A model generated the notes under the pieces. That model was not told where the DNA came from, ran no database searches, and saw only the letters and a list, made by a program, of their open reading frames with translations. The position numbers and the translations under genes are program-made. Of a DNA stretch of 64,000 nt, positions 15,983-57,833 are shown piece by piece; positions within the stretch are counted from its first letter, which is position 1; each line of letters begins with the position of its first letter. The stretch is from Oculina patagonica (taxonomy: Eukaryota): contig NC_135760.1 of NCBI RefSeq assembly GCF_052425735.1, positions 10,540,001 to 10,604,000 of the forward strand, given 5' to 3'.

Positions 15983-16414
15983 CCCAGGGGGGTACTCCGG
16001 CTTGTAAGTGACGGGGATGATCGAATGGAGGCAAAACTCAGGACCCCAAAAAATCCCTAGTAAGTCTTCCGACATTACCCTCAAAAATCCCTGGACCAAA
16101 ATAGCCCCCCAAAAAATTCCCTTGTCAAATTACCTCAGTCTAATTTGGCAGGAGGGGCAATAATATAATTAACACAAAGAAAATCATAAAAAAATTGAAC
16201 GCTCGTGTTTGTTTATTCATCATACCATAAATACGCCAAGGCGCTATAGTTTGTTTTTAATACCCCCAAAAATCCCCTATTTAAATCAAGTCACCCCAAA
16301 AAATAATTGACAAATTTTCCAACCCCAAAAAACCCGGAATCAAAAATTTTAAACCCAAAAAAATCCTTCGATCATCCCCGTCATTTACAAGCCAGAGTAC
16401 TCCCCCCCCCTAGG
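15983..16414. mobile_element. MITE with CCCAGGG...CCCTGGG ends and 8-bp TSD (same family as 49004-49442)
   Basis: Long TIR GGGGTACTCCGGCTTGTAAGTGACGGGGATGATCGAA; TSD TCGAAAAC; absent from the homologous copy-1 intron at about 6201. Confidence 0.85.
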
Positions 16415-16852
16415 TCGAAAACTAAATGTTATTGAAAACTGATTCAGTCTAATGCAAGCATTCCACACATTGGAATGTTTGTTGTCCACAAACTAAGTCA
16501 AGCCAGCATGAGCTTGGGAACCAACATTCATTTGCGAAAATTTTGATGAAGTTTAAAGAGTCCTCTTTTGACGATTCACAAACACGCTGGTGTGGGTCGG
16601 CTAGCAGTTCTTGCAAGGTCTTGCATGAATGGCTCCCTACCCTTCGAGAGAAAAACAGAACAAGTAACAGGTAATAATTATAACCCCTAGTCCCCCAAAC
16701 CAACAGCAACTGATACACAAGGGGACTAGCCTGCTACACTTCTGCCCGGGATGGGACACAAAGTCTGCCTATGCCCCCTCCCCATAGCTTAACATTGATA
16801 GTTGCATTAATAGCTGCTTCTATAAACATCATGGTTTTAATGTTCTTTTTAG

Positions 16853-19800: not shown

Positions 19801-19967
19801 ACCCTCCTGGTGACAGACAAGAAGGCGATGGTGCTGTCGTTTATGATGAAGACTTGCAGTTGGCCATGGCACTGTCAGAGCAGCAACTAGAGGAAGATGA
19901 AAGGCTGCGAAAACAAGAAGAGGAGGAGCTCGCAAAAGTCATTCAGCTCTCTCTGTCAGAGAATTAA
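16853..19967 (+). CDS. ANKRD13: ANKRD13 copy 2, last three coding exons
   Basis: Exons 16853-17104, 17870-18011 and 19745-19967 are intact and in frame, with protein nearly identical to copy 1; flanking homology runs from about 15800 to 21515. Confidence 0.88.
18020..19037 (-). mobile_element. 5'-truncated CR1/L2-type LINE (ORF2 C-terminus plus 3' UTR)
   Basis: Peptides ILPNLTYCHTVWHFC...KLERVQERAL...LPSLVNRRLQDILILMYK and NLRSSDFPIPRFNTVNYGKHSIRYLGPYLW; AATAAA plus TATG-repeat tail; absent from the copy-1 intron. Confidence 0.85.
18143..18257. repeat. Perfect palindrome, 57-bp arms with 1-nt spacer
   Basis: 18143-18199 is the exact reverse complement of 18201-18257. Confidence 0.95.
19233..19624. 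mobile_element. MITE (GGCC...GGCC termini, PIF/Harbinger-like)
   Basis: GGCCATTCCAATAAAATGTTGCGTTTCCCATCGCCC / GGGCAATGGGAAACGAAACATTTTGTTGGGATGGCC; absent from copy 1. Confidence 0.75.
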
Positions 19968-20618
19968 ACTCTAAGGCAGTCTCAGGTCAGCTTTAAACTC
20001 TCCTTTGTGCTTTAAATGCATTTCTTTGAATTCTGTTAGGAGAATTTGGTTTTCAGTCCAAATGTTTTTCCTGAGGTAATAAGTAAATTTATTTTTACCT
20101 GTTTGCTGGAATTTGTTATAAAATGTAAAGAGAGGTTCAAAATTACAATGAGACTATGTGACTGTAACTGGAGCTACCGGTACTTGTGTTTTAAACACAA
20201 ATGACATAAAATAATAAAAACAAAAGACAAATAGAATTACAATGCTGTGCCAAAATACAAGATACAATGTGTTCTTATTTGTCTGGTTCCGGCCTGAAAA
20301 AGGAGCCCTACTTTGACTCCACAATAAAAACCAATGACAAAGAATTTTAAAACTTTATTCCAAGCTGAAAGATTGCTTCAAATGCACTTTTTATGCTCAT
20401 TGTATTTTTCTCTCCCATAAAAAGTTTTTGGTTTTGACCTCCAACTGCACCCATCTCTCTGGTAATTCAAGTTTAGGCTGAGTTTGTACTTTCCTTTAAG
20501 AGCTGTCAGTGTCGGGGGGCGGTTTAAAAATAGGGTATATTGGTTCAAACAGCTAAATCTGAAATTCTTTGTCTCCATTTTTAGAAATTCACAGTGGTCT
20601 GGTTTTGTTGTCTTATAA

Positions 20619-25591: not shown

Positions 25592-28500
25592 TCACACTGC
25601 TGTGTTTAAACTGTTGTTACTTTTTCGTTCTGTATTGATGAGAAAGGAGCAATGATTTGAGTTGTAGCAAGATGTACTTTTGTATACTTGACTGTTGATC
25701 TCTTAATAAATGTCCTATTTTGTACTTTTATTTACAAATGCAAAACAATTAATTGTTACATTCAGATAATTTATTATTGTTAAAAACAGTTGGGCACTTT
25801 CTTGGCTTTGTGGATGGTGTGAATTTCTGCAACTGACTATAGTTCTATATCAAATACTCCAGGCAGTGTTTCATTGGCTATCCAAACCCCTTGAATTTCG
25901 TCAAAAATACTCTAGCTGCTGTGCATCATATTTTCAACTCTCTTCTTGGTGTTTGGTTATCCCAATGATACAAAGTCTCTCTTGTTGTGTGATATATTAC
26001 AACTAAAAACACAGTGCAGTATTTGTTTTCTTCTTGCATACCTTTGCCATCAATATGACCTTCTTTTTTGCAACAGCTTTCCTTCACTTTCTCAACAACT
26101 TGCTTTCTTTTTGCGCACATGATTAGTTCAAACACCACAACAATTAGGGTGACAAAACCCATTAAAGCAATGCCAATCTTGTAAGGAAGAACATCCACTG
26201 TCAAAAATAATAGAATTCTTGTTAATATAACAATTAATACATGTATGTATAGTTTAAGCCAAAGAGTACTCATTTGGTGTATTATCTTGGTGTGACTGTC
26301 AAGATAAGAATAACCTTGAGGCATGCTGCAGTGTAACAGTGACCTGCACATTGTATGACAAGTAAATATATGTCACTCTGGCCTGTCCACACAGTCAATA
26401 AGTAGATGTATACCATCAAAACTGAATTGATTTCATTAGGCATATAGGGTGAGGTATCAAATGAAATTGTAAGTGTGCTGTAAATCCCCCCCCCCCCCCC
26501 CGGATGGGATGCTAGTTTATTACAGATTGCTTCCAGAATTTTTTTTAATTTGCCCTACAGTGTAGGAACAGGTTACCAGTACAGTAGATTCCTGTTAATC
26601 TGGTCACTAACAGGCTACAAAAAACAAGCTAAAATAACAGGGACCCATATAAAAGAGGTTCTTGGAATAAGAAAATGACTGACACATGTGGGTCATCACA
26701 AAGTGCAAGGCAGTGAGGTGTGCAATCCATTCCGGTTAGCACTTTGGTTAGGCTAAATGGCAGTTTGGTTAGCCTACAGTTAGCTTAGGTAGCTTGCAGT
26801 TAGCTTTTTTTATTGGGATAAGGGATTTCTGTTTCACATGCCTTGCATGCCTTGCTGCTTTGCCTTGCATGCCTCACTGCCTCGCATATTTGTAAGACTC
26901 ACACACGTAAATGTTTTGTTCAGGCCAAAATAAAATGGCTGTAAATAAACAAGGTGGATCAGGGTTCACTGTACCCATTTTCACACCTGGTTGCAGAGGG
27001 GTACTGTGAGAGTGAAGTGTCTTGCTCAAGAACACAAAGCAACAAAAGGACCCTAGCCACGGATTGATCCAGGATCCAAATTTGTACTAACAACTAGACC
27101 ACGCCTACTACTGATAGATAAAAAGATAAAGTCTGTATTTGAGCCAAGTGGCCCATCAGCCTGGAGCTTATTTCAGTTTCTGTAGCATGTAGCAGCTAGG
27201 AGAATCAGCATTAAATTTGCTGGTACCAATTATGCACCTCAGGGTGGAGAGAGAGAGGCACTGTGGGAGTATTAGTAATTAGTGTCAGTTGCGGGAGAAC
27301 ACAACGCAGTGACCCTGGCCAAGGCTTGGATCCAGTCTGCTCAATCCAGACTTCAGTGCAAAAGAAAAGCCAACAGGCCTCATTAGCAACACAGTCACAG
27401 TGGATGCACTAAAAGTAACAATGCAGATTCCTCACCTTTTTCATTTTCACCGTGCTGTTTTCCAGTATCCGGACCACTTTTACATCTGCAGTTCTCTTCA
27501 TCAGGCACCTCTCCTTGGTCCCACTGGCATTCCAGGTTACATGTACAGTGGCAACTTGTATGATTATATACTGTGATAGTTTTGGGTTCTCCACTTAAGG
27601 GATCTTTTACTTCTAAAGAAATCGCCTCCCTCTTTGATGCTGTGCATGGTTTTTGACTGGGTGGAATGCTCTCGTCACAAGTTCCAGAGCAGCGATGTAG
27701 TAATATGTGAAAAGGTTTGTTCCCCTCGGTTTCTTGAACCACCACTGGTCTTGGCTGACATTTCTGCTCACTTAGTTTTACTGATGAGACTTTCACTGGG
27801 GAAAAACATAGTAAATATTTACACTTTTATATTTAGGAGAATGGGGGGGTGGGAGCCTTGAGCCATGCAGCCCATACCGCCAGAGCTTATCCCTGTTTCT
27901 GTATCATTAGGTGGCTAGGAATATTTTTACTCCCCCCTGAATGGGATGCTAGTCCATTGCAGGGTACCCCCCCCCCCCAGCATTATGTTGCCGTACCCAA
28001 TAATATACCTAGGTGGAGAGAGGCATTAAAAGAGTTAAGACAGATTCCGCTGAAAGTCCGAGCAATGAGTGCGAAAATTAAGTACCAAAAATCTACTCAT
28101 TGCACGGCAACATTTTGTACACTATTTAAAAGATCTCATCGAAATTTATTTGTCTTAGTGACCCCGCAATTAAATTCTAAAGCATTCTCGAGAAAATTAA
28201 AGTCAAACCTCGAAAAAATGTATTAAATGCGCGCCATTTTGTTTTGAACTGGCGCAAGACGTCCGTTTTAACTGAAATAAAGACAACTTCAAATCCATTT
28301 TTCTCTCGCAGGGTCAGCTTGAGTACTAAATTTTTGGCAGGTTTTTGTTAGCTGTACTAAAAACTGTTGCCATGCTAAGAGGTCTTTTTGGTAACTTTAT
28401 TTTTGCCTGTATTGCTCGAATATTGTGCGGAAACCATCTTAAGCAATTTGCCCAAGAACATAACACAGTGACTCCGGCCAGGGCTCAAATCCAGACTGAT

Positions 28501-30508
28501 CAATCCAGAGTACTACGCAGTAACCATTAGGCCACTGTGCCCCCCCGGGGCCCGTTTCTTAAAGGGGGGAAAACCTTCCCGGGGATAAATCTCTATCTAG
28601 TGGATATTGTATTTTTTTTTCCAACATTTTTCCTCTGGATATTTTTTTTTCTATGGAAAAGACAACCCCCCCTTAAAAAACGGGCCAGGTGAATAGAGTT
28701 GATAAAGGGGGCCAGGAAAATTCTATATCAGTAGTTCTGTCATTTTTGTTCATTCTTTCTTAAATTGTTACAACTTGAATTTCCAGAGCTTATTGACTTA
28801 AAATTTGAAGTATGATGTAAAATAAATTTATTAATTTTATGACACCTTGCTCAACCTTTGCCCAAATTAACACCAAACTTTATTGATGACGTTTTACTAT
28901 TATTTTTATGGGATTTTACCCCTAAACAATTATTGTTTAAAAAAAAACATATTGTCGCAACATTGTCGAAATAATTCTGTTAAAGCATTGCAGATATTGC
29001 TTTCTAAAGAATGACCTGGAGTCTGACTCAAATTATCTTCTACATCAATAAGAAGGCAGATGCAACTTGGTCGGTGCTACTAATTAATTAATGTCCATGC
29101 TATCCTCTGTGTAATTGATGAATAACAGTAGCCAATAAACTCCGGATAAATTTTGACAGTTGGAAGCTTTTTAAAAGCAAAGCGGCTCTCCTGGAGCTTG
29201 CTGAACGATTTCTTACGCTTGGCATCACAAGTCGCATCAAATATGAATGAGAAACGCCCAAACAAAATATCGGACAGTTTTACGGCTTTAAAGAGGATAA
29301 AAACTGTTCCTTGCTTTATTTATTTCTGAAGATTAAAAACTACGAGGTGGCAACTGTAATTGTTTACATAGAGAAATCGATCAGATAAGTTGCGTCTATA
29401 ACAACACTTGCGAACACACAAGATTTAAAGGCGCTACGAAAAACAAAAGACTTTAAGCAGTTAATGAAACAGGAATGAAATATTCTTTTTTGGTGCTGTT
29501 AAAAAGCCCACAAAACAAACACGAGCGCTACTGTTTTGTACATAAATAAAATCCCATCAAAGGTGACAAATTCCACACATTGCTTCCCACCATTTAAAGG
29601 GCTGCTGTTTGTGTAATCAAATTGTGATTTCGTAAGCAGAATTTCTCAGAAATTGCGAAAATTAGTTTGACTTCGCCCACATAACAGCCAACAAACATCC
29701 TTCGCTAACTTCTCACAAGTTGCCAAGCCACGGTTAGAATCACGAAATATTCCCATGTGTTCACTTACGCGGAAAATTTTTGGCGGTTTTTCGCGGAACC
29801 GTCATGATCATGAGTGAGTGCAGTTTCCTGACGCATAAAAAAACAAAGCAAATTCTCCTTCCTATTTAAAGACTTGGCATCGAAATAAAGCGAATGGGAG
29901 TGAAAATGATGTTGTTAAGTTCATTTATGAAGTCAAATCAAACGTTTTGATTCGTTCGAAATGTGTTGAAACCGACAAAAGGGTTTACATTTCACCACGG
30001 TAAATCCGCGCGCGCGATCAAATGATATACAAGCATGTAGCGTGAATGTTTTCGTACATAAACAGTTTTATTCAATTCATGGTCTTTATTAGAGATCAAT
30101 CCGAAATAATTTTTAAAACAGTTTCTCGAAAGAAAAGAAGGAAGGTTCTAATTGAAATCGGTTATTTTGTAGCTTCCGTAATAGTGATTTCTAAAGACTT
30201 GTTATCAAACAAATATCAAATTGATCGATGTTTTGAAATTTGCGGCGCCTCTTTCGTTGAGAATGATTATGACCTCAATCTATAATTTTTGATATCAGGC
30301 ACGTTGGGGTGATAAGTTTAAGAACTACTTCTAAAGAAGATGGGAAAGTGCTCGCTGCACGTGAAGTTGTAGTATTGAAATAGTATAGAGTATTGAAGTC
30401 GGCAAGCGCTCACTAACCTGATAACATAAGAAGAGTGACCACAAGGAAAGTAAAGATTGTTGATAGCCTTGTCAATGATCTACAACCACTGCATATGCCG
30501 CAATCCAT
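25592..30508 (-). CDS. Transmembrane PDGF/VEGF-domain protein V1 (short form)
   Basis: Exons 30508-30418 (signal MDCG...TIFTFLVVTLLMLS), 27795-27436 (CQPRP...HRCSGTC...KPC...NHTSCHCTC), 26197-26042 (TM IGIALMGFVTLIVVVFELIMC then AKRK), 25629-25592 (ERKSNNSLNTAV*); all phase-1 GT-AG junctions. Confidence 0.85.
26500..27105 (-). mobile_element. SINE interrupted by a Tc1/mariner MITE (26582-26971), which itself holds a second MITE (about 26687-26902)
   Basis: SINE halves on either side of TA|CAGTAG...CACTG|TA; inner inverted ends TGTGGGTCATCACAAA / TTTGTAAGACTCACA. Confidence 0.6.
27850..28540 (-). mobile_element. SINE interrupted by a TTAA-targeting DNA element (28039-28438, Kolobok-like)
   Basis: SINE body resumes after the duplicated TTAA; imperfect TIR GACAGATTCCGC / GCGGAAACCATC. 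Confidence 0.65.
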
Positions 30509-33500
30509 TTTTCTTCGGGTTGTTGTGTAATCCTGGGCGGAGATGGTTACCCGCTTCGTTTAACTGCGGAGAAACGAAGGTAATGAATGAATGAAGCACC
30601 GAAGGAACTTGTAAAATTATTACTCAAACGCCCCAGCCTCAGAGCCAATCAGGAACGAGGTCAAAGATAGTAAACTTCCGGTGGCTCGGTGCTGAGCGCG
30701 GAGAACCGGAAATTAATCCAAACACGCTCTCTTGCAAACTTTCAAAACTTTTGTTGACTCATGCACTTGATTTAAATTCCTGCAGTTTAAATAGTGGATT
30801 TTTGTCTGCTTATTGCTCAAAGAAGCTGATTTTGTGTCAATGTTTCCTCGGGGAAAAGAATTCAATTGTCAGAAACCCATGACCTTTATGTTTATGCGTC
30901 AGTGCTCCGATCTTTTTCCCAGCTACATTAGCTACGTGAAAAACCCATCCCAGATTCATTCATCTTCCTGTGTTGTTTTACTCGTAATGTACACACCCAG
31001 GGAGACCCAGGTAGAGGAAGTTGTACAACTTCAAAGCACTTCCAACTAACTAAATTTAATTTCTGTGAAGAGATATACAAACCACAGAATAGTCGAGTGC
31101 TCTATTTATTATCTGATCTTGGCGGTTTATATATTCCTGTTCCTGCCTATTAAATTCATCAGCCTAATAGAAAATATGCACTGTTGTGTAAATCAGACAT
31201 TGTTGGATTTGTTTGAATAAAAAAGAAAGCAAAGTTTTCTGCTTTAAAAATATGGCGCGCGCCGGGTTATTGAAGTCAACTTGAGATAGCTTGATGGGTA
31301 GTGAGCATTTTTTGTTGACCGATTTCAATTTTATCTTGTACCTATGAGCCACCATGCTTTACAATTTTTTTCTGTTTAGACTATTTACAAGAGTGGAAAC
31401 ATTCTTGTAGACCTCAGTAAAAGATTAAATAAATGGGGACCTTCGCTTTCAGGCTAGCCTAGATCTAGCGGGCTGGATATATTGCGGAAGACGGCACGCC
31501 TGAAGACAAAAGATAACTCGTATATTTGGTTGACTTCCTGAAGTTAAGTATGTACAACGATCGTTTTCATTTACGTTGTTCCTCTGTGGTTCCTGCGAAT
31601 GAATCTTCTGCGTGCAGGCATGCCGGTGAATAATAACACAGTTATTACTGTGTACCTCCGCTATAAAAGGAAGTTTTTCCGGTGATATCTTCCTGAAAAT
31701 TGTTACGTGAAGAACAATGTGTTGATCGCCCTAACGTCCTGTTCAATCTGCGAAGTACTATTTTCTTTTTTGGTTACGTTCTTAAATGATGTTCTGCGGT
31801 TAACTTAAAATACCGTAATTGGCGCTTGCTTTCGCAGTTAGTCACTCAAACTTTATTTGTTCAACTGTATGAGGTACAGTGTATAGACGTCATAAGTGAC
31901 GTAAATACAGAGCGATCATGCGAAACGTCCAATCTCGAGCAAATGTTTTTAGGCAAAAATTCATTCGCAACACAATATGAGTAAAATATAGTTATATTAG
32001 TGTAAAAGTGGAATATTTCAGCCAATTGCGCCTCGATAGATGAGGATAAGAAACTTATGAGAGTCTTTTTATAGTGAGTCTGCCTTGGAAGACATGAGTT
32101 TTGCGAGGGTGCTACATACATGCACGTGGTCGAGCTTTTAATAAAACGCGAATGCATGCATGATCGAACAGGATAATTACTCTAATCAAGGCCATTCATT
32201 TAGATCTAAACATGGCTTTAAAAGGCATTAATAGAAAGTGATATCTCACTATTACACAGCACATTTGCTTTTATATTCAGTCATACCGAATTATTAGACC
32301 TGTTAATGTGTTACTTCCGAAACAGTCACCTTTTTACTGTTGTTGTGGACAACGAAACGAGCTTTGCTAACAAGCTCTAATAATCTTTAAAAATTGGACT
32401 TGAAAAGTGAAGCAATTATCGCCGAAATTGAACCCACATAAAAGTATTTAACTCACGTGTTATTAAACCAGAATGTCTCGATGAAAAGAAAATCAATTAA
32501 TTTCTTACCTTAATTGCTTTTAAGATCAAAAATCCTTTATCCCGATTAGAAGAAAATACTTTCCTGCTGACTTAGTGTGAGTTCAGCTTTTAGTAGGGTA
32601 GTTTTGGTCCCCCTGGTTGAAGTGTGTGTTCGGTTTATACTGTAATAAAAACGCACCCACCTGTAAATCGGTTTATATCAATCAATTCCGCGGAGGTGGA
32701 ATTTCAGAAATGTCGGTTGCTCCGTTACACCTAAATATTTGCCATAAATTTAGAACAAAAGTTGACAAGGAGTGGTATTAGGCAAGACTTTGTTATTTAG
32801 TCGCGGTGTCCGTAGAAAATAAACGTCATAAAAAGGTGGATTGCTCTAGATTGATAAAGCTAAAAATAATGCGTCGACCTTTGTTAGCAATTTTAAGATG
32901 ATCTTGAGCAAAACAGAGATTATCGTGGGTTAGTGTTTTAAAACGTCGTCAACAATCTGTCACACTTGAACAGTCTAGACTTGTAGTCCCATACTGTGAT
33001 AAAAAAAAATTCAATATTTATTGCCAGTATTATGTTTGTGACATAAACTTTAAAAAAGTTTGTAGATTCGAAACTATTTAGGACATTCTTTCACTTTTGA
33101 TTTTTTTAGATCAAGGAACATGTCGTCTTTCCTGTTGTCTTGTTTTTGTTTTCCAGTATACCATGCAACGGAAAATAACATACACTTACAAAACAAGACT
33201 CCCACATGTCTAATAAAGCGTGGGCCTTGGTTTGATGTTTTCAATTAGCTCAATATAGATTTTTAAAAATTTGTTATCGCTAATTAATTCTTCACTTCCG
33301 GTTTCCACGGATCTCCGCCAAACACTGACGTCATACTAAATGTTTTCGATACCAAGGCGGCAAAAGATTACGGACAATTTCAAGAGCACTCGAGATGTGA
33401 AACTTCGTCTGATAATGTGACCGGTCAAGCAACCACCGGAGATTTCCGACAATATCCGAACATAAAGTCGATAACTCCTCGACCAGCGACGCGCACCCGA

Positions 33501-36047
33501 ATTTGGCAAAGCCCAAACTTGACAAGAATCGAAACAGTTATATTTTTTACAAAACATTCTCACGGGTAGGTAGGCAATTTTTTTAGAGGCTTCCGCAAAG
33601 GAAACGCTTACATGCCTAAGTATTTTTGGAAGCCGGCTTCGTCTTTTTTTGTTTGTTTAGAAATTTCTGGTTACTTAATTTGTTTCATTGTTGTGACCAC
33701 ACTTGGATTCCAGCTAAGTAAAGCCTCAGCTAGCCTGAACAGAAGGCAGAAAGTCTTTTTAGTATCCCGTGTAATCTCGTGATTTTCTTATCGTAAGATA
33801 TTTTCGTAGCTTCCGATTTTTAAGAAGCTTATGCCTATCAGCTCAGTAAATCGATCTTAATTTACTTATCTCTATTTTCACTTACGGTCCGTAGAGAAAT
33901 CTTCCGCAGGAGGAAATCCTCGTGTTTCGAAGACAGATTTAATACGTAATTGTTATCTCTGTGTTTCGCTGTTTCGTTTTTGCGTCGTAAATTGACAGCA
34001 CAATCGAAATAATTAATAATCCGCTGAAGTTAGAACTACTTTTTAAAAAAAAAAAAAAAATCTGTTTGGCCCAAAGTTATTGACTGTCTATTAGACTCAA
34101 TTTACACTAAGCAAAACACACAAAAAAACACTGAGAATCATGTTCAATGTCGCACATTTCAGACTCATTTCAGACCATTTCAAGTTTGCACCTTGTTTAC
34201 GAAGAAATGAAAGTCTGAATTGTGGCGCGTTTGCAAGTGTTTACGAAGAAATTAAAGTAATTGTGGCGCTTCAAATCAATGCGTAAAATTAACGATTTCC
34301 TTTCGAAGCGATTAGCGGATTAGATCTTATTGAATTTAGCGAAAAGTGGAACGGCACTGTTTTTTAGAAGGCAGGTTCGGCCACTGGCTGGGCTGCCATT
34401 GTTAGAATTATGGGGTTTCACAGAAACCCGAATTGCAAACTTTGAATAACAACATAATTCGGGGCTAAAACTAACATGTTCGTGAAGCCTCTGGACCCCC
34501 CCCCCCCCCCCCCTTGTAGACAGTCGGCAAATATCAAAAAGTTCAGAAGCGAGGCTAATCCCCATTATATCAATTGGATTAAACAAGCTTAAACTAATAC
34601 AATAAGTAAGCTTGTGGATCAACTATAAAACCGATGTTATCGAATGGAAACGTTAACTGGGGTTAGTGGCTAAGATGGTAGTGTTTTCTATTAGCCGCAG
34701 AATCGAGACATTATTTCAAGACATTTTCACCACTATTTATTTGTAATATAATAAAAAAAAAGATATTAGGCAACTCGTAACCCAGGGCCCCCCCCCTCCA
34801 GAGCGAGACCAGACCCAACCAGGGCCCTCTCCACTGGGGGGCGGGAGAGAAAGTCCTGGAACGAGGTGGAATAGGGTGATAGAAGTAATATGAGCGAGTG
34901 TTGCTATAATGTTGCTACAATGCACAAACATTCCTAAATTCCAATTCAACCTGGCCTGGAGCCGGACCGCCCCAGACCCGCACAAAAACTAGCTCGGGCT
35001 GAATTGGCTTCCTCTCTAAATATTGTAATTTAAGTTTTCAAACTATAATGGAAGAATCTTGACGAATCAGCAGTGAAAAGTGACACAACAACGTTGAACA
35101 GCAAATGTTTCAGTGTCTGATTGTTTCCACGGCAAAGTGTTGTTTAAAAATTCTTTCCCGCCAAAACAATTGAATGACTGACAAATGACAAGAATTAAAA
35201 GATATATGGTGAGTGAAACTCGACTAAGCTTGCAATTCAGTGTTGTTGTCGGATTTTTTCGGGATTAGATTTCTTTCTTTGCTGATCTTGTACCCAGCTC
35301 TTCAAGCATTCCTAAATACTAGTTAAATATTAGTTAAAAATTGAGAGATCTTTTCCTTTCAGTGAGCTTACCTTTTGAATTCACTCCTATACAAAGTAGA
35401 TTACTGTGGCTACCACGATTTTAGAATAGTCACAGAAACGATTGGAAATTTTCTTTCCAACGAAATATTTATACCATTCATTTCGCCACCTATTTTTAAA
35501 CTAACATATTATTGGCTTTTACACGCTGAGCTCAAAAAATGGAGTTCCTTTAAAAATACTGGGAAGTTGACACTCGACAAATTTTCAAGTTATAAATAAG
35601 CTCGTTTATGGTACATACGTTTTTCCTAATAAGGTTTTAATCTACTTAGAGTTTAAGATTCCCAGAAATTGGCTTCAGTAAAGAGAGGAATTCACCCATG
35701 TCATTCACATAATGAAATTATCCGCACAGGAAGGGGGAAGAGTAAGATTAAGTTTTATGTAAATCCAGCACGACAGCACTAATCTGGATATCTTTGAAAA
35801 CGTATATCTTTCTTTGGTTTGGCCTAAGGTCCACAATAAAAACGGAGCTTTAGGTAATCGAAAAGGGAGCTTTAAGAAAACGTTTCCGGAGCTGAAAAAT
35901 GTGAAAACGCTGGCTAGGTGGTGTAGTGTGGACGGCCGAAAGTCAACAAAACGCTGTCGTCACAAAGATCCTCAAAGTCGTATTTAGCACGGGCTCAAGT
36001 AATGGCGCATGCTCCAATAAGCGTTTTCAAACTTATATCGATATTAA

Positions 36048-36594
36048 CCCTATTCAGACCGGGCTTTTTGGTCCAGACCGGGGGGGGGGGGGCGGACCGC
36101 CCCCCCCCTCCGACTCCAGAATATTTAAGCAATCACAATGAAACACAGGATATATAGTATGTCCCAAATCATCTTGCATATGTCACGTGGGATGATAACG
36201 TCACTATGTGATGACATCATATTTCAAAACAGCCGCCATCTGGATCCGCCATCTGGATTTCGAATTTTTCAAAACGTCAGAAAACCGCCCAAAATATGGA
36301 AAATACTCAAAACCAATAAAAATGTGCTTAAAACCCGTAAACATATGAAAATAATTGCTTTAAAGTTATTTTTCATTAATAGAAACAGGAAAATTACAAA
36401 TTTGGGAAAACATGCCTGTCAAAATGCCGTGCCATGGTGACGTCAGTTCCTGACACAACAACCTACCCTACCAAATTATTCCCAGATAAATTTTAGATAA
36501 AGTCTCCAAGTTTGGCAGCGTTTGGTTGAATATTAAAAAAGTTATAAGCGTTCAAAGTCGGCGCGGGCTTTCCGCCCCCCCGGTCTGGATAGGG
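36048..36594. mobile_element. piggyBac-type MITE
   Basis: TTAA|CCCTATTCAGACCGGG...CCCGGTCTGGATAGGG|TTAA. Confidence 0.85.
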
Positions 36595-37640
36595 TTAAAC
36601 ATTTTATTTATTTTTTGGGTGAAAACTCCGTTTTTGAATTTATCCGGATTAGCTGAGTGTGGACGGGCTATTGTTGCTACTAGCCTGGTGCGTTCACAGG
36701 GTGTTGACTGATGTGTGACGCATTCACGATTGTGGTTCATTTTGCTGACTTCCTTCTCGTGTAATACCGTGACGTATTTACCGTACAGTCGTGGGCGGCC
36801 TTTCTTCGCGACACAATGTTTGTTGTGGAGATGTGGATCGATGAATGAATCAATCGATCAATCAATAAATTATTGAGGAACCCAGGCCGACGTTTGCGAA
36901 CGGGGACTGTAGGTAGTCGCACTCTTTTTATCATACATACATACTTCCAAATAAAAACACAGGATTTTCTTATTGGGTCATGAAAAACACAATATTAAAT
37001 TAAAAACAGACTGTGTTCCTTTTCAGCCCTGGTTAACTTTCATTCTCGCCGTTTTGGGCCTTATTCCAATTTTCTTTTTTATTTCAGATCTTCCTTTTCT
37101 TAATTTCAATTAATTAGCCTTATTTGGCAAATCATTATCTTCGTCACTTACGTCACTTAGTTAAATTGATTTTTAAGGGTTTTGTTTTTGGCGCATTTCC
37201 TGTCCTGTATGATATACGTAGACTTGCGAAGATATACGTAGACTTGCGGGTTCACGGGAAATCCCCGAAACAGGCTCGAAAGGAACTTGTTCAGTCAGCT
37301 GAACAAGTGTCAAATAACTCTATCAAGCAGTCCGTTCATGAAAATACTGTTAATCTTTATTTTGCACTTGTTTTCAAGGTCTTAAATATTTCTTTACAAT
37401 AAATAATCATCTTTCGGGGTTTTGCTTGCATTTCATGCATGCAGCTTTCACTGAAATTAATAAATATTAAATAACTTTATCGAGCTTACTGAACTCGAAG
37501 AAACAATTTTGTACACTTTTCTTAGCCGTAGCTTTCGAATTAAATAGACATGCCCTCAGTGTGAGGCATTGAAAATAATATCAAACTCCTGTTACTAATA
37601 TCCTTCACTTCGGATATGAGTCGGACCTGCTGCTTTGATT

Positions 37641-50790: not shown

Positions 50791-51722
50791 GGCCAAATTT
50801 AAACAAGTCTTCTCTCTTCGTCTTAGCTTAGGGGTGTTGTTTCAGTGTTAACAGTCAGTAATCCAAGCAGAAGGACCAGGAGCTCACTCCTTCGCCGCCG
50901 ATTTGCAAAGTACTACTATGCTAATATGTTCGTTTCTGATCGATATCTGAAAGCCGACTTCCTTTCAAATCGTCTGAAAGCGAATGCAAATCAACCCAGT
51001 CACGAGACGTAATTAGATAAGCGCAGAACAAAAGGTTAAAAGGCAAAGGAAGTAAAAAATAGCGCCGCTAAGTCAACGCCTTTTATGTTTTATGTTTAAA
51101 TTGTATTCAAGTACCGCAAGGGGTTTTCCCTTTTCCCCACCCGCTTAATTATAGCGTGAGAAAAAAAAGTAAAAACCACTGCGTTGAATAGATTCTTAGA
51201 ATTAATAAACATTGGCTTGCATAAGGGTTCACACCCCTTTTATCACACGATAGAAGAATAAACTTCAGGATGTTTTAAAACAAAATTGTTTGATGACCGG
51301 AAACATGTTATTACCGAGTTCATGATATGACTCCCGATTCCTGAGTCCTCTTGACGCACGCATACGGCAAAATATTGATTCTTCTAAAATCGATACGTAC
51401 ACGCCAATTTCCTTTGACGTATGTGTACGACAAAATGTTACACGTTGCCTCCTTGCTAAAAATATTTGTTTCTTTTTCTGGACAAGAAGAATAAGAAGCT
51501 AGTTGTAAAGTACCTAAACTTGCTCGTGTGCACGGCTCGATAAGAGAAACGTAATCGAGGAATTAGAACTTATGACGTCATGAGAGGAGAAAGTAATATT
51601 TGATCATCATACTTTATCAGGCTTTTAAAATGGGAAATAAAACCAATTAATCAGTTTTCCATATATTTTCCGTATTTTTTTCCCGCGAACTTTGACTTAT
51701 ACTGGTACGAATGTATAATGTA

Positions 51723-51901
51723 CAGTTGAATCCCGATAATTCGAACCTTCAAGGGAAATCGAAAAAGGTTCGAATTATCGGGGGCTCGAGTTATCGAGGG
51801 TAAAATTTGTAAAAAGAAAATGACCTGGAGGGGAATCGAAAAAGGTTCGAGTTAGCGCGAGGTTCCAGTTACTGAAAGTTCGAGTAATCGGGATTCAACT
51901 G
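51723..51901. mobile_element. Tc1/mariner MITE
   Basis: TA|CAGTTGAATCCCGAT...ATCGGGATTCAACTG|TA. Confidence 0.85.
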
Positions 51902-52468
51902 TATAGGGAAAATCCCGAATAATATGGGATTGCGGTCACAAATTTTCCCGACTAGGGTCTTTTTTTTATTTTATGTCGGGAAATTCCAGGCCATCGGGAA
52001 CTTCGTTTTTCTACCATTTGACCCAAATCTCGGTATTTTCGGTTAAAAACCAAATAGAAGAGTCATTTTCCGGAAGTTATTTTCGAGAATTGTGCGCTAC
52101 GTTTCATTCCGGTCGGTCAAACTGTCGAAAAACTTTTTACTACTTATAATCCATCTCTCTTGTTTCCAGTCTCTTATCAAGAGAAAAACATAACTTCTAA
52201 CCGTAAACTGCATTATAAATGGTAAGCGCCATCTCTTTCGGTCGGTCTGCTGATTTGGAAAAATACACACCACTGGTCATTCTAACCAGTTTATTTTGGC
52301 AAATGAAAATTATCCCTGGTTCTTGACGCCTTGTCTAGTACCTAGGCCTCTATTTTCGTCGCAGTCAAACCGTTTCGGGTCACGTGGAATTTCGTATCAG
52401 ATAAGTCACTGAAATGAATTGACCGTGCGGGCCTGGGAAAGAACGCCGTACAGGAACTAGGCTTGTTA

Positions 52469-52762
52469 CATTCTCGTCTTTCTTAGCCGGCTGCACCTTG
52501 GCACGAGATAACAAAGGGCTCTGGGGACACAGGATTTCCAGTCCTAGATTCTAGGACTTCCGGTCTTCATGTATGCAGTCATGACGTTTCAAAAGAATGT
52601 ATGACAGAGTCGTTACGTTTTCGACTTCCGTTTAGGAATTCTTTGTTCCAAACAGCCAATCAAAAAAATCGAATTAATTCAAAAATCCTATGTCTCCAGA
52701 GCCCTTTGTTTTCTCGTGCCAAGCCGGCTAAGAGAAACGAAAGGGCTATGGGGACGAGAATG
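52469..52762. mobile_element. Long-TIR MITE (relatives at about 23120-23400 and 46395-46474)
   Basis: CATTCTCGTC...GGCACGAGATAACAAAGGGCTCTGGGGACA / TGTCTCCAGAGCCCTTTGTTTTCTCGTGCC...GACGAGAATG. Confidence 0.75.
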
Positions 52763-54140
52763 GGCTTATTATTACTATTTAAGACTTCGCCATCACTGCC
52801 CCCCGTCACTCCCACCACCCCCTACCCCATTTGGCGATTAGCTATGGCGACTGGGAAAAAGTTTATAGTTTATATCATTCTTTTTGCGGTAGTTGTTTTG
52901 GATGACAATTTAAAAATCATTCCTGATCGAAACGCCAGCTCACAGGCTATTTAAATTTTTTAAAATCGGCTATAAATTTTACAATTGGTTACTCTCCTCA
53001 TGTTCCTCATGTTATAATGGGATGGAATTTTCTTTCAGTTTCGTAGCATTGTATATGGTATATAAATTTCCGTCAAGAAATTAGTAGCAACCAAAGGGTA
53101 TATCAGGGTACATAGAGAATGGTTTTCACATCCAGTTAAAATCTCCGAAGAAACGAAAACAGAAACATTTGCTACGATATATACAATTTATTATTTTGTT
53201 TATTTTTTCAATATTTAACACCATTTTTCTCTTTGAAAGTAACAAGCTAAATAATGGAAGCGTTAACAATATCGTACACGAAGTATTGACTGCGCATGTT
53301 TATTTCTTAACCGCAAGAAACACAAAGACGCTGGGTAGGAGATTTCTGGAATACAAAAGGTCACGTGATATTACCACTACTTTATCTGCCGCCAATTCGT
53401 GGTGGCTACACTTTATCAACTATTATTGATAAGAAATATTGTTGAAATATAAAGTTCTTTTCTCAGAAAAGATAATATACCGAAGGGATTAAATATACAT
53501 TTGTATATCTTATGAATGAAGTTTCCTTCATTTTACACTATACTCAACTACTTTATTTCCGACACAAGCTAAGATATTTGTTGTTTGCTAGTGGTACAAA
53601 TGTCTGGTGTACCCCTGATTAAAGCAAAGTAAAACTCTTCTTCGAATGAAAGATTTTGAACCAGTAACTTTTACAGATGTAACTGGCTTTTATAGAAAAA
53701 GACCTATTAACTGACCAATGACTTCCAACAACGTGTCGTATTTGGTAATCTTTACAGATTTTACATTCAACAAAATTGCGGAATGGTTCTTTATATTTCG
53801 CACTTACGTCAAACGATTTCATTTCCACTAAAAGATTATATTTTTACAAGTTGACTATATGTGTCATGGAAACGGCTAAGCACAGAACGAAGCAAAAGAC
53901 AAAATACCTATCTCTTTCGGTTACCCATTAACGGCAGGGAGCCATGAAAGGCGGTTATATTCGTAACCATTCGCTTCTTTCAGTCACTAATAAACTCGAC
54001 AGTGTCCAAAAACACGATTTGTCTTATTGCCTTAAATGATGGTTGTCTTAGGGTCTAAATATCGCGGAATTTTTCTTGACTTGCATCCCGCGTCTCTTCC
54101 GTATTTACTGCCCATGAGATACTGTATTTATATCCAGGTC

Positions 54141-57100
54141 TTATATATCTGTTACCCGTGGTTTTGGAGACAGGGGAGCAGTGCAGCTGTCATTATCACT
54201 CGACTCCTTTGCACCATCTATGGAATCTGTAGAATCAGACTCAACAGCCACCTCTAAATCTGCAAAATACAACGTGGAAAAATTCTCATTAATGTTTATA
54301 AGACTGCAGGACCTCTGGCCAACCTAAAGCATTACATTGTATATATTTCAAGCGAGTGGCCTGGGGGCTGTTAGATGGTATACTGACTTTTTCTGAAGTA
54401 CAATTCAAGGAAAATTTAACAACTTCATGAGTATCGCATATCAATTTATCTAGATCGGGAAGGGGGGGGGGGGAGAGAAATACAAAATACTCAAAACCCT
54501 ATTGTAAGGTGGCATCATTGGATCAATTTAGGTTTCTGGGAAACTGCTCACCTACCCCTCCCCAAACTTAACATTAACCCTTACTTATCGCTTTGGGCAA
54601 AATGTTAGGTTTGGGGAGGGGTAGGTGAGCAGTTTCCCAGAAACCTAAATTGATCCGCATCATTTAGCACTGCCAACAATAAACACTTAACCCCTGCCAT
54701 CTTTTGGTGGTAGCTTTTGTTACTTTTTCCCTGTTTTCTAAAGTATTCCGTTCAAGGGCTACTTGATAAACTTCAAGGAACTGGGAAATTCTTTACGCCG
54801 GAAAAAGGTTTGTGGGAACCGTAAAACTACATTTACTACAAAAGGACGCGGTCAAGTGCTGTCAGACATGACGCATGCAATAAAGTTCTCACGCAGCGTC
54901 AATCCCACCCCTTCCCCGTTTAGGTTGTTTTGTGGAATTTCCAACAGTTAATCAAAGTTTAAAGAGCAAAAATGCTTGAGGGAATTTCAAAAAATCTTAC
55001 AGTACAGTGCTCTTTTCATTTCTTTACCTTTTTCCCAAAAATGCCTTTATTGCAATCTACTTAAAAGTACAAATATTCTAAAAAGACACTTACAGGGTGG
55101 AGAAATATCATCATTAGTCTTGCACGAGTCTAATCTGTCGAGAGCGGAATGGGCCGAGCTCTGTTGGTTTCTTTTTCGTACCCAGTGCACAAGAGCACAG
55201 ATGAGGAGAATGATTAGCACAGCTTGACCAATCAGAAGCGTTATGAACATATGGGTCCGCGATTGAACTGCAAATTGAAACAAAATGGTGTAATATTTAA
55301 TATGTAAGTTTTAATGAGGCAACGAAAGTAATTATCACGTAATACATTGGAATGTATTGTATTGTTATATAGCTAGAATTTTTCCCCAACTGCGCGCGCT
55401 CTTATTGGCTAAATCTATGACGTCAGAGGGTAACATTGCAATGTTGCCCGCGAATGCTGACCCACGAGCGCCATTTCATTTCTTCGTCGTGCTGTACAAC
55501 AAAACACTTAATGACTGATGAGTGTATATTGTAAAGGTAGATAAACTATGTTATTATACCTGTTTTGTGATCGCGGAAGGCCCGCTGCACGTCTACGCAC
55601 TTGCAGTCTACATCAATTCCCATTTTCATTTGTGTACAGTCATTCACAACACTGTCAGGGCACCTACAGCCACAAATGTCATTGCTCCACACCTGAACAA
55701 GACGAGTAACAAAATAGATCGATTATTGATGCAATAGAGCCTCACAGTTAACTTTACCAGTAATGATACAACTTATAGACCTCAGGAGATTATTACTGGG
55801 GAGTGTGTATTAGACCAAGGGTTTTGAGTATAAAAATAGTGTAATTGTAGTCAGGGGATGACATAGTTTGTTAGTGATTTGACGCTGACTGTTTTTTATG
55901 CCATTTTTCCAAATCGTCTCGGCTAGTGCTTAAGCCTTCATCAGTTAAATAATCAATGCTGTTACACGCGATTTAAAAAGGCAACACGTTTGCGCACGCT
56001 GCAAAAATTTAGGTTTTGCGTGTAAGGGTTTGATTTTGCAACCCTACAAGACAGGTTTTGCGTATAACGTAGTCTCTTTTTAGCACGTAGTTTGTCCGCG
56101 AAACATAGGTTTGAATACGTAGGCACCAGCTGTTTAACCTCATTTGCATGTAGCAGACGAGAGACCGATTCGAGATAGGACACTGGAAACATGATTGCGC
56201 ACTGTATGCCGACGCTGTCTAGGTGCCAAATTGCTCATAGACAGCAGTCTTGGAGCATAGAAAACAGCTTGTGATGTAAGACTTACCATTCCTGGACAAG
56301 GGTCAGGTGCTCGATCACATTCGCATTTGCATTTATGGCTGTTCCACCTGAAGGAGAATAAAAATAGTTAAATTTTAGTAAAACTAAACAACCAATTGGG
56401 AGAAGTACCATAAACACGGGATTTACAAGACTCGTCGCCACCACTAACAGAAGTTATAAATGCACACGGCATCGGTAAAGTGAAAGTATAGTTTATTCTT
56501 TCCACTGCTGACTTCATAAATGAACAAAGATACCATTTCATTCATATTTCCAATTCATAGTCTTTTCTCCGAGTAACAATTGCAAAGCATTCTGAAAGGC
56601 TGACAAAGCCGACAAACCTAGTGAAATACATGTATTGAGACTATTTACGCATTCAAGTTTAATTTGGTCAGTTAATTTCAATTTCATTAAAAAAATTTAT
56701 GCGTTCGTTTTGCATTAAGTTTTTCAAATTCGCTGAACAAAAGTGAAGTGCGCTGTCTTCAATTTGTGGCTAAATGATGTTTTTGTTGAGCCACTTGGCT
56801 AGAATTGGGATTTTTTTAAGAAACCAAAGCTAATACGTAAATGATTGAACAAGTCGCACACTTACCTAAAGCCGTCTTTGCAAGCGAGTTCTTTTGGTGG
56901 TCCGTTGGGATACCTGCACTTGCAAGCGCAGAGGTCATTGCTCCAGTCCTGCACGGTCAAATCACAATCAGCGGGACTGGCGACACACTCGTGAGCGCAG
57001 CTTGTGTGATTCTTCATCGTGATGGTTGCACGACGAAAGTTGGTCGAGCGCGAATAAACTTGAATGTTTAACTCGTCGTAGCTTTTGACCACGCAGTGCT

Positions 57101-57833
57101 GGACTTTTGGGGAAACTGTGTTCGCCGAACCAGCGCATCGGTGGAGCTTGACAAAATACGGGAAATAGCCGTGATCGTTGGGGTCCACGGGAACCACAGT
57201 TTCATGCGTTTTACAGTGAATATTTTCCAAATCTGCGAAGAATAAAATGGTTATTATCAGTATTATTATAAATATCACCAGAAACTTAGCAGGTGGGTGG
57301 GTGGGAGGGAGGGTTGCGGGTCGACGGAATGGTGGTAGTGGGGGGAGGGGGAGAGGGATGGGGTGTTGGCGGTTGATGGGGACTGCTTGTAATACCCACT
57401 AATACGTTCATCCGAGTCGTTAATATTCCACTAAATTCCGTTTGACTTTTAAACCTATAACTTTTATAAAGCTACTAACCCCCGAGGGGACACGCCGCAG
57501 CTTCAAGACGTGAATTCATTACCCTTTTAATACCCAAGCTGGAAAAGGCACACTTCTTTCGAGCGGAACCTCCCCGTATCGTCTAGTCTACTATAGGCGG
57601 ACTACCCCAGGGGTATGACACTTTTTCAGTTTGATTTGTCCTCTTTCCGTTGCGGAAAACAATCTGAGAGCTGGGAACAAGTCAAATGAGACTCTCTGAT
57701 AACAATCAAGATCGAAACATTTACGCTACTTACTTTTCACTTTTTTAGCAGAAACCGTCATATCCATCAGTTCCAACAGACACAGGAAAAATATTATTGA
57801 CACTCTGGCGGGACTGTTAGCTTTATTTGCCAT
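54141..57833 (-). CDS. Transmembrane PDGF/VEGF-domain protein V4 (degenerate cystine knot)
   Basis: Exons 57833-57734 (MANKANSPARVSIIFFLCLLELMDMTVSA), 57232-56866 (PYFVKLHRCAGSA...QHC...NHTSCAHEC), 56347-56287, 55692-55560, 55267-55094 (TM MFITLLIGQAVLIILLICALVHWV then RKR), 54259-54141 (YLEVAV...KPRVTDI*). Confidence 0.9.
54520..54656. mobile_element. 137-bp fold-back MITE, GG...CC ends, 8-bp TSD
   Basis: About 55-bp near-perfect arms; TSD GCATCATT at 54512-54519 and 54657-54664. Confidence 0.9.

What the first reader, a model, noticed from the sequence alone, without database searches (positions are those of the whole stretch)
27436..57232. Both inter-chain dimerisation cysteines are absent in every paralog
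Established: in the 8-Cys PDGF/VEGF pattern (P-x-C2-V-x-x-x-R-C3-x-G-C4-C5), C2 and C4 form the inter-chain bridges. Seen: PFHILLHRCSGTC, PYFVKLHRCGGSC, PYYIQLHQCQGSW and PYFVKLHRCAGSA, so C2 is H/F/Y/F and C4 is T/S/S/S. Inference: these proteins are monomers or non-covalent dimers. Membrane clustering could replace covalent dimerisation, or they could act as receptor antagonists or adhesion molecules.
Basis: partly seen in the sequence, partly recalled or inferred. Interest (0 to 1): 0.75.

Follow-up and report, generated by a model that had tools for sequence, protein, structure and literature searches.

The report
Coral VEGF-like genes lacking dimer cysteines
Four neighbouring coral genes for membrane-anchored VEGF-like growth factors do lack the two cysteines that tie vertebrate VEGF/PDGF chains together, but this is an ancient, family-wide and already published trait of cnidarian VEGF-like proteins, not a peculiarity of this locus.

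Summary
The four motifs sit on the minus strand at the stated places. Alignments to solved VEGF-A, VEGF-C and PDGF-B put H/F/Y/F at C2 and T/S/S/S at C4. No other cysteine lies where a shifted alignment could use it, and neither assembly gap touches a knot exon.

It is not special to this locus:
- 13 of the 14 PDGF/VEGF knot domains I found in this 529 Mb coral genome lack both cysteines. One gene on another contig is canonical (RCVGCC).
- 149 of the 151 nearest protein-cluster representatives lack both. Those that carry a name come from stony corals, sea anemones, a tube anemone, Hydra and jellyfish.
- Rauniyar et al. 2023 (PMC10328876) already state that cnidarian VEGFs frequently lack these cysteines, as do fly PVF-2 and worm PVF-1.
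- The scan made the same observation on the fifth paralog just beyond this window (s1-294370).

Gene B is transcribed and spliced. It encodes a 298-aa type I membrane protein: signal peptide, knot, BR3P repeats, membrane anchor. All four ectodomains have even cysteine counts, so none has a spare cysteine for another interchain bond.

Whether the proteins are non-covalent dimers or monomers is unresolved; the one dimer prediction gave no verdict. I favour non-covalent or clustering-dependent dimers. Interest is low to moderate.

The parts
27436..27795 (-). Paralog A, knot exon (VEGF homology domain; C2 = His, C4 = Thr; C5, C7 and C8 kept). Motif at 27677-27715.
   Evidence: alignment to VEGF-C; splice model against ortholog P0123. 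Pfam PF00341 16.7 bits, below the cut-off.
30418..30508 (-). Paralog A, exon 1 (start codon and signal/hydrophobic leader).
   Evidence: The N-terminus resembles that of P0123.
25926..26197 (-). Paralog A, membrane-anchor exon and start of the cytoplasmic tail. The 3' end of the model is uncertain.
   Evidence: tblastn to P0123 and P0102; model.
40553..40604 (-). Paralog B, exon 1 (Met and signal peptide).
   Evidence: Intron 40210-40552 is confirmed by spliced contigs in two runs.
39785..40209 (-). Paralog B, knot exon plus BR3P repeats (C2 = Phe, C4 = Ser; six knot cysteines kept). Motif at 40097-40135.
   Evidence: Pfam PF00341 31 bits against a cut-off of 27. Alignment to 1mjv. AF2 model pLDDT 96.5. 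Foldseek top hits are VEGF-A, -B, -E and PDGF-B.
39029..39188 (-). Paralog B, exon 3 (last BR3P-type repeat and stalk).
38347..38481 (-). Paralog B, membrane-anchor exon (135 bases, in frame).
37641..37765 (-). Paralog B, last coding exon (cytoplasmic tail ending -THV, then stop).
48506..48890 (-). Paralog C, knot exon (C2 = Tyr, C4 = Ser; C5 = Trp; C8 lost, CGPQC). Motif at 48769-48807.
   Evidence: No Pfam PDGF hit, but 45% identical to D.
48087..48227 (.). Assembly gap 1, inside the intron after C's knot exon. No coding sequence is expected in it.
   Evidence: The junction with the next exon is continuous against P0023.
47801..47864 (-). Paralog C, exon 3 (degenerate BR3P repeat, CRYEC).
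46997..47113 (-). Paralog C, exon 4 (BR3P repeat). The donor position is tentative.
46126..46317 (-). Paralog C, membrane-anchor exon. Boundaries are tentative and the tail beyond it is unresolved.
   Evidence: Hydrophobicity scan; model.
45803..46069 (.). Assembly gap 2, just downstream of C's membrane-anchor exon. It may hide C's last exon.
57734..57833 (-). Paralog D, exon 1 (Met and signal peptide).
56866..57232 (-). Paralog D, knot exon (C2 = Phe, C4 = Ser; C5 = Ala; C8 = His). Motif at 57123-57161.
   Evidence: Alignment to PDGF-B. Pfam 20.7 bits, below the cut-off. AF2 model pLDDT 95.6. Foldseek finds the VEGF/PDGF fold.
56287..56347 (-). Paralog D, exon 3 (BR3P repeat).
55560..55692 (-). 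Paralog D, exon 4 (BR3P repeat and stalk).
55094..55267 (-). Paralog D, membrane-anchor exon (174 bases, in frame).
54141..54259 (-). Paralog D, last coding exon (tail ending -TDI, then stop).

Best explanation
What it is (shown): four tandem minus-strand genes of a cnidarian family of membrane-anchored, VEGF-C-like PDGF/VEGF ligands. Each has a signal peptide, a VEGF homology domain, 0-3 BR3P cysteine repeats, a single membrane-spanning segment and a short cytoplasmic tail. Their knot domains keep the intrachain knot cysteines: all six in A and B, four in C and D. They have no cysteine at the two interchain positions. The replacement is old and fixed: usually an aromatic residue (Phe/Tyr) at C2 and a small residue (Ser/Ala/Gly/Thr) at C4. 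It is found from Hydra and jellyfish to stony corals.

How it most likely works (inferred): the domain still forms the usual antiparallel VEGF-type dimer, held non-covalently. The conserved hydrophobic residue at C2 would be buried at the two-fold interface. The dimer would therefore be reversible and concentration-dependent. Anchoring in the membrane, and perhaps scaffold binding through the tail, would raise local density enough for a bivalent ligand to engage a VEGFR-type receptor on a neighbouring cell.
For: Identity and fold:
- Pfam PDGF hit above the cut-off for B.
- AF2 models of B and D at pLDDT 96.5 and 95.6, with VEGF-A/B/C/E and PDGF-B as best structural matches.

Absence of C2 and C4: residue-level alignments to 1mjv, PDGF-B and VEGF-C. 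No cysteine is available for a shifted alignment, and ectodomain cysteine counts are even.

Ancient and selected:
- 149 of 151 representatives lack both. C2 is Phe in 73 and Tyr in 33. C4 is Ser 88, Ala 19, Gly 15, Thr 8.
- Named members come from Hydra, Rhopilema, Nematostella, Actinia, Ceriantheomorphe, Stylophora, Acropora, Porites and Montipora, plus one whose record tag I read as Aurelia.
- 13 of 14 knot domains in this genome lack both.
- The Cys/non-Cys state at C2 changes only once on the family tree.

Functional genes: B is spliced at four GT..AG introns in contigs of two runs, with exon depth far above intron depth. Intact orthologs lie clustered on one Stylophora contig.

Precedent for a non-covalent dimer:
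- 1mjv, VEGF-A C51A/C60A, is deposited with two chains.
- PMC10328876 states that VEGF-C forms non-covalent dimers, that stable VEGF-A can be made without these cysteines, and that missing interchain bonds are the rule in protostome PVFs.

Precedent for extrinsic dimerisation: the VEGF(C51A,C60A)-GyrB switch (PMC3779851).
Against: - No direct evidence of oligomeric state. The only complex prediction scored 0.10, which is no verdict.
- The mature N-terminus before C1 is only 7-12 residues, and the models show no N-terminal helix. From my own knowledge, that helix contributes to the dimer interface in VEGF-A, so the interface may be smaller here.
- The engineered C51A/C60A VEGF behaved as a monomer at low concentration.
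- The apparent size complementarity between the C2 and C4 positions does not survive correction for shared ancestry.
- No receptor pairing was tested.
Confidence: 0.6

Rival explanations
1. The ectodomains are obligate monomers. They bind a receptor without cross-linking it (antagonist or decoy), or they serve as cell-surface adhesion or recognition molecules rather than as activating ligands.
For: - Both interchain cysteines are gone and there is no spare cysteine.
- The short N-terminus has no helix.
- Monomeric VEGF(C51A,C60A) still binds its receptor but does not activate it, and its authors note that such variants act as antagonists (PMC3779851).
- The genome keeps one canonical 8-Cys VEGF that could be the activating ligand.
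Against: - A conserved exposed aromatic residue at C2 (106 of 151) is more easily explained by a buried interface.
- According to PMC10328876, VEGF-C forms non-covalent dimers and missing interchain bonds are the rule in protostome PVFs, so loss of these cysteines alone does not imply a monomer.
- A family this large and old is unlikely to consist only of antagonists of a single ligand.
Confidence: 0.22
2. The proteins are still covalent dimers, linked through cysteines elsewhere: in the BR3P repeats, the stalk, or the membrane and tail region.
For: - VEGF-A has a further interchain cysteine outside the knot (Cys116, PMC3779851).
- Among relatives with a membrane anchor, 25 of 60 had odd ectodomain cysteine counts by a rough count.
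- A and D have cysteines in or near the membrane segment and the tail.
Against: - All four window proteins have even ectodomain counts: 10, 22, 18 and 20.
- The BR3P cysteines follow the regular C-x10-C-x-C-x-C pattern, and the AF2 model places them in compact repeats at high confidence.
- The odd counts in relatives depend on a crude guess of where the membrane segment begins.
Confidence: 0.08
3. They are secreted venom or toxin components, like snake-venom VEGF-F, and not developmental ligands.
For: - One family member is labelled 'toxin candidate' in a tube-anemone transcriptome.
- A zoanthid VEGF-like transcript was discussed as venom-like (PMC5630949).
- Snake-venom VEGFs are among the structural matches.
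Against: - All four genes encode a membrane anchor and a cytoplasmic tail.
- 56 of 73 long relatives have one too.
- The 'toxin' labels come from similarity searches only.
Confidence: 0.05
4. Some copies, especially C and D which also lack the C5-C8 knot bond, are decaying pseudogenes, so their missing cysteines are simply damage.
For: C has no Pfam PDGF hit and one degenerate BR3P repeat. Its 3' end is unresolved because of a gap.
Against: - All exons found have open frames with GT/AG junctions.
- Orthologs of C and D with the same cysteine pattern exist in Stylophora, Acropora and Porites, many as about 1-3 kb contigs assembled from public sequencing runs (Logan).
- C5 and C8 are lost together in 66 representatives.
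- D folds at pLDDT 95.6.
Confidence: 0.03

Closest known systems
Cnidarian VEGF-C-like PDGF/VEGF proteins as surveyed by Rauniyar et al. 2023 (PMC10328876), e.g. Stylophora pistillata XP_022798395.1 'balbiani ring protein 3-like' and Actinia tenebrosa 'VEGF C/D-like'
   Same: - Same family. B is 67% identical to the Stylophora protein across the knot exon, and the two align end to end.
- A VEGF homology domain followed by BR3P repeats.
- The paper states that these proteins frequently lack one or both intermolecular cysteines.
   Different: Little differs. The paper hedges that some of the absences 'might be an artifact of the alignment'; here no cysteine is available for any other alignment. 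The paper never uses the word 'transmembrane', whereas these genes encode membrane anchors.
Human VEGF-A C51A/C60A mutant (PDB 1mjv) and the VEGF(C51A,C60A)-GyrB switch (PMC3779851)
   Same: - The same two positions lack cysteine.
- 1mjv is among the top three sequence matches to B in the PDB, with E-values close to the best hit.
- It is among the top structural matches to both models.
   Different: - It is an engineered alanine pair in a soluble protein with an N-terminal helix.
- The coral proteins carry Phe/Tyr/His at C2 and Ser/Thr at C4, have almost no N-terminal extension, and are membrane-anchored.
Vertebrate VEGF-C / VEGF-D
   Same: - A VEGF homology domain followed by BR3P repeats.
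- The NHT-x-C sequon before C7 is shared with VEGF-C and is at least 90% conserved in the family.
- The mature forms are largely non-covalent dimers (as stated in PMC10328876).
   Different: VEGF-C and VEGF-D keep C2 and C4. From my own knowledge, they also have long propeptides and are secreted and activated by proteolysis. They have no membrane anchor.
Drosophila PVF-2, C. elegans PVF-1, vertebrate PDGF-C
   Same: All are PDGF/VEGF-family ligands that break the 8-cysteine pattern at the interchain positions (PMC10328876).
   Different: They are soluble proteins from bilaterians. PDGF-C has a CUB domain.
TGF-beta family members without the interchain cysteine (GDF-9, BMP-15, GDF-3, Lefty)
   Same: By analogy only, from my own knowledge: cystine-knot growth factors that lost the interchain cysteine and act as non-covalent dimers.
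   Different: A different cystine-knot family. Not tested here.

Membership tests
PDGF/VEGF growth factor family (Pfam PF00341) | A match to the PDGF/VEGF domain profile above the curated cut-off of 27 bits. | tested here: met
   Met for B: 31 bits covering profile positions 1-82; 32.8 bits in the genome scan. A (16.7 bits) and D (20.7 bits) are below the cut-off. C has no hit. All three join the family through B: E-values of 1e-10 to 1e-31 between paralogs.
PDGF/VEGF growth factor family | The cystine-knot fold of VEGF/PDGF: four long beta strands with the knot at one end. | tested here: met
   AF2 models of B and D reach pLDDT 96.5 and 95.6. Foldseek probability is 1.00, with TM 0.6-0.72 (normalised by target) to VEGF-A, -B, -C, -E, PlGF and PDGF-B.
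PDGF/VEGF growth factor family | The six intrachain knot cysteines (C1, C3, C5, C6, C7, C8). | tested here: inconclusive
   All six are present in A and B. C and D lack C5 and C8 as a pair.
PDGF/VEGF growth factor family | The 8-cysteine signature with interchain C2 and C4 (PROSITE-type pattern P-[PSR]-C-V-x3-R-C-[GSTA]-G-C-C; pattern recalled from memory). | tested here: not met
   None of the four proteins matches the pattern. C2 is H/F/Y/F and C4 is T/S/S/S. The literature accepts members without these cysteines: PDGF-C, PVF-1, PVF-2 and cnidarian VEGFs.
VEGF-C/D-like subgroup | BR3P repeats (C-x10-C-x-C-x(1,3)-C) on the C-terminal side of the VEGF homology domain. | tested here: met
   Three full repeats in B, three in D, two in C and none in A.
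Functional VEGF-type ligand | Dimerisation and binding to a VEGFR/PDGFR-type receptor tyrosine kinase. | not testable with these tools
   The homodimer prediction gave no verdict. Receptor binding was not tested.
Cnidarian membrane-anchored VEGF-like family (scan note s1-294034) | A signal peptide, one membrane-spanning segment after the cysteine-rich ectodomain, and a short cytoplasmic tail. | tested here: met
   Full models for B (298 aa) and D (317 aa). Membrane-anchor exons were found for A and C. 56 of 73 long relatives have such a segment.

The most novel reading that the evidence does not exclude
The conserved aromatic residue at C2 and small residue at C4 would be a packing substitute for the interchain disulfide. 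That would make the dimer reversible. Ligand activity would then be switched by local density in the membrane, through anchoring and perhaps clustering by PDZ-type scaffolds that bind the conserved C-terminal [S/T]-x-hydrophobic tail. This would be a natural counterpart of the engineered VEGF(C51A,C60A) 'dimerise to activate' switch, used for contact-dependent signalling in animals without blood vessels.
Probability: 0.15. Interest if true: 0.55.

Novelty: new member of a known kind. Interest (0 to 1): 0.25.

Why it matters
The result corrects the impression that this locus is unusual. Loss of the interchain disulfides is the normal state of a large, old cnidarian branch of the PDGF/VEGF family, and it is already in print.

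Three things are added here:
- The absence is not an alignment artefact.
- The replacing residues are themselves conserved: aromatic at C2, small at C4.
- A coral genome keeps exactly one canonical 8-cysteine VEGF beside about 13 cysteine-less, mostly membrane-anchored copies.

If the cysteine-less ligands prove to be reversible dimers whose activity depends on membrane density, they would be a natural model for how covalent dimerisation was gained or lost in growth-factor evolution. That remains to be shown at the bench.

Tried and rejected
1. Homodimer prediction for B residues 1-92, two copies: score 0.10 against a mark of 0.32, and the controls were not run. This is no verdict, neither for nor against dimerisation.

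2. Size complementarity between C2 and C4 as a sign of contact. A raw 2x2 table looked significant (odds ratio 11, p = 0.002). On a family tree, however, the 'small C2' state arises at most three times, with one independent pair on supported branches. Rejected as evidence.

3. A membrane-anchor-skipping soluble isoform. P0021, a 249-aa relative of D without the anchor exon, turned out to be an old automatic gene prediction (PFX20686.1). The RefSeq model and a contig from a public run (Logan) give 307 aa, and the exact look-up found no contig. The anchor exons of B (135 bases) and D (174 bases) are in frame, so skipping is possible, but nothing supports it.

4. A shifted alignment that would supply C2 or C4 from another cysteine is impossible, because none exists in the relevant stretches.

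5. Other cystine-knot families that share the C-x-G-x-C motif (TGF-beta, glycoprotein hormones, Norrin). Only PDGF/VEGF appears in Pfam, and Norrin appears only far down the structural lists.

6. RNA from raw poly(A) reads (run X21) gave almost nothing on gene B. The evidence for splicing rests on contigs of runs whose RNA nature is a guess, though depth restricted to exons and GT..AG joints fit RNA.

7. A findings search with several words returned nothing.

Full report
**Setting.** The window is G000:C3:10540001-10604000 of a 529 Mb genome. The nearest named relatives of its proteins come from stony corals: Desmophyllum pertusum, Stylophora pistillata, Acropora, Porites and Montipora. I therefore treat the genome as scleractinian. 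It is eukaryotic, about 38% G+C, with introns.

**Observation.** The four cited strings are on the minus strand at 27677-27715, 40097-40135, 48769-48807 and 57123-57161. Each lies in one long exon, and the four exons are 31-45% identical to each other. I call them A, B, C and D.
- Pfam finds the PDGF/VEGF domain in B above the curated cut-off (31 against 27 bits) and in A and D below it. C has no PDGF hit.
- phmmer against all PDB chains aligns B column for column with the VEGF-A C51A/C60A mutant 1mjv, placing Phe on Cys51 and Ser on Cys60.
- D aligns with PDGF-B: C2 to Phe, C4 to Ser, C5 to Ala, C8 to His.
- A aligns with VEGF-C: C2 to His, C4 to Thr, with C5, C7 and C8 kept.
- C gave no PDB hit for its knot but is 45% identical to D.
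- In every paralog there is no cysteine between C1 and C3, and at most C5 between C3 and C6. No alternative alignment can supply C2 or C4, which removes the caveat of 'alignment artefact'.
- The cysteine at +4 from C3 is C5, not C4. It forms the universal C-x-G-x-C ring motif, and its presence tracks that of C8: 60 representatives have both, 66 have neither and 7 are mixed.

**Gaps.** I built gene models from ortholog-guided splice searches.
- Gap 48087-48227 lies in the intron between C's knot exon (48506-48890) and its next exon (47801-47864). The Stylophora ortholog aligns across that junction with no residues missing.
- Gap 45803-46069 lies just downstream of C's membrane-anchor exon. Only C's tail and 3' end are unresolved.
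- The finding does not depend on continuity across either gap. I filled nothing in.

**Anatomy.**
- B is a five-exon gene encoding 298 aa: signal peptide, knot, three BR3P repeats plus a partial one, a membrane-spanning segment, and a tail ending -THV. Its four introns are confirmed by spliced contigs with GT..AG ends in two public runs. In one of them (X1) exon depth is in the hundreds to about 1,400 against 0-63 in repeat-free intron bins; in the other the contrast is weaker. The RNA nature of those runs is a guess by the tool, but the pattern fits transcripts.
- D has six exons and encodes 317 aa, with the same layout and a tail ending -TDI.
- A is a short form: knot, a few more cysteines, then the anchor.
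- C has the ectodomain and an anchor exon, with its tail unknown.
- Ectodomain cysteine counts are 10, 22, 18 and 20, all even. No unpaired cysteine is on offer for a substitute interchain bond.
- AF2 models of B (pLDDT 96.5) and D (95.6) adopt the four-strand knot fold. VEGF-A/B/C/E, PlGF and PDGF-B are the best matches, including the disulfide-deficient mutants 1mjv and 1mkk.
- The stretch before C1 in the mature protein is only 7-12 residues, and the models show no N-terminal helix.

**How general is it?**
- In this genome I found 14 knot domains: five in this tandem array (the fifth lies beyond the window, in L008), four on contig C8, two on C365, one at C5:8.42 Mb and one at C5:32.52 Mb. 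Thirteen lack both cysteines. Only the gene at C5:32519402 has the canonical PQC...RCVGCC pattern.
- An exhaustive HMMER search with B found 459 cluster representatives. The motif could be read in 151 of the 154 proteins in hand (the best 150 from that search plus four from the first search). Cysteine occupies C2 and C4 in only two of them, one an insect protein and the other unnamed.
- C2 is Phe in 73 and Tyr in 33. C4 is Ser 88, Ala 19, Gly 15 and Thr 8.
- Named members come from Hydra vulgaris, Rhopilema, Nematostella, Actinia, a tube anemone and several coral genera, plus one whose record tag I read as Aurelia. The replacement therefore predates the split between anthozoans and medusozoans.
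- On a quick family tree the Cys/non-Cys state at C2 changes once.
- Orthologs of B, C and D lie on one Stylophora contig with neighbouring accession numbers, so the array itself is old.

**Literature.** Rauniyar et al. 2023 (PMC10328876) report 72 cnidarian VEGF-like proteins that resemble VEGF-C and have BR3P repeats.
- They state that PDGF-C is the only vertebrate exception to the 8-cysteine pattern, and that in protostomes missing interchain bonds are the rule.
- They note that VEGF-C forms non-covalent dimers and that stable VEGF-A can be made without these cysteines.
- The paper does not contain the word 'transmembrane'.

The trait is therefore known. The scan also recorded it on the fifth paralog (s1-294370).

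**Mechanism.** What is shown: the fold, the absence of C2 and C4, the even cysteine count, the membrane anchor, transcription of B, and deep conservation of the replacing residues. What is inferred: the oligomeric state.

I favour a non-covalent, reversible antiparallel dimer for three reasons. A conserved aromatic residue at the position that sits on the two-fold axis in VEGF is easier to explain if it is buried. The published survey treats loss of these cysteines as compatible with dimer formation. And the C51A/C60A mutant is deposited with two chains.

Against this, the engineered C51A/C60A VEGF fused to GyrB is monomeric and inactive at low concentration until dimerised from outside (PMC3779851). 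The coral proteins also lack the N-terminal helix.

My one complex prediction gave no verdict. An apparent size complementarity between C2 and C4 disappeared once shared ancestry was taken into account.

**Verdict.** Novelty is low: these are new members of a known kind showing a published trait.

Noticed in passing
window 37641-37765 (B tail) and 54141-54259 (D tail); relatives P0010-P0154: The cytoplasmic tails often end in [S/T]-x-[V/I/L/M/F], a class I PDZ-ligand-like motif: B ends -THV and D ends -TDI. Among 60 membrane-anchored relatives (B's own model is one of the 60), 24 end this way, against about 3% expected from tail composition (binomial p about 1e-20, not corrected for shared ancestry). 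This suggests binding to a scaffold.
   Followed up: partly
window 48506-48890 (C) and 56866-57232 (D): C and D also lack C5 and C8 together, so the ring of the cystine knot cannot close. The same joint loss occurs in 66 of 151 relatives. D is still modelled at pLDDT 95.6 with the VEGF fold. The engineered VEGF-A C61A/C104A (1mkk) is a solved precedent. This matches scan note s1-294141.
   Followed up: partly
L005 4274-4603 and 5057-5326 (G000:C5:32519402 region): This is the only canonical 8-cysteine PDGF/VEGF gene found in the genome (PQC...RCVGCC, then HTGCQC). Its knot is split by an intron and followed by BR3P repeats. I did not check whether it has a membrane anchor.
   Followed up: no
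L002, L003, L004, L023 (G000:C8:30.39-30.44 Mb); L007 (C365); L018/L022 (C5:8.42 Mb): There are further clusters of cysteine-less VEGF-like genes. Four are on contig C8, with C2/C4 of F/S, T/Y, T/Y and F/G, and long runs of BR3P repeats in a single exon. Two or three are on the small contig C365 (F/A). One is on C5 (F/A), with the knot split by an intron.
   Followed up: partly
alignments A1 and A2; window knot exons: An N-H-T sequon directly before C7 is at least 90% conserved across the family and is shared with human VEGF-C ('nhtsc'). It is probably a conserved N-glycosylation site next to the knot.
   Followed up: no
window 6200-9160 and 16300-20480, + strand: These two stretches are about 85-95% alike in translated pieces and keep the same order. 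They flank the 500-N gap at 15296-15795. This is either a local duplication of part of the upstream gene or an assembly duplication around the gap.
   Followed up: no
window 5427-5531, 8038-8230, 26949-27086, 27890-28025, 43861-44092; also 15950-16430 and 48900-49510: Short dispersed repeats occur on both strands inside and between the VEGF-like genes. One of them was read into the C-terminus of the public gene model P0054. One copy sits in the first intron of gene C.
   Followed up: no
window 38347-38481 (B) and 55094-55267 (D): The membrane-anchor exons are 135 and 174 bases long, both multiples of three. Skipping them would keep the frame and give a soluble protein with the same tail. I found no transcript evidence for this.
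   Followed up: partly
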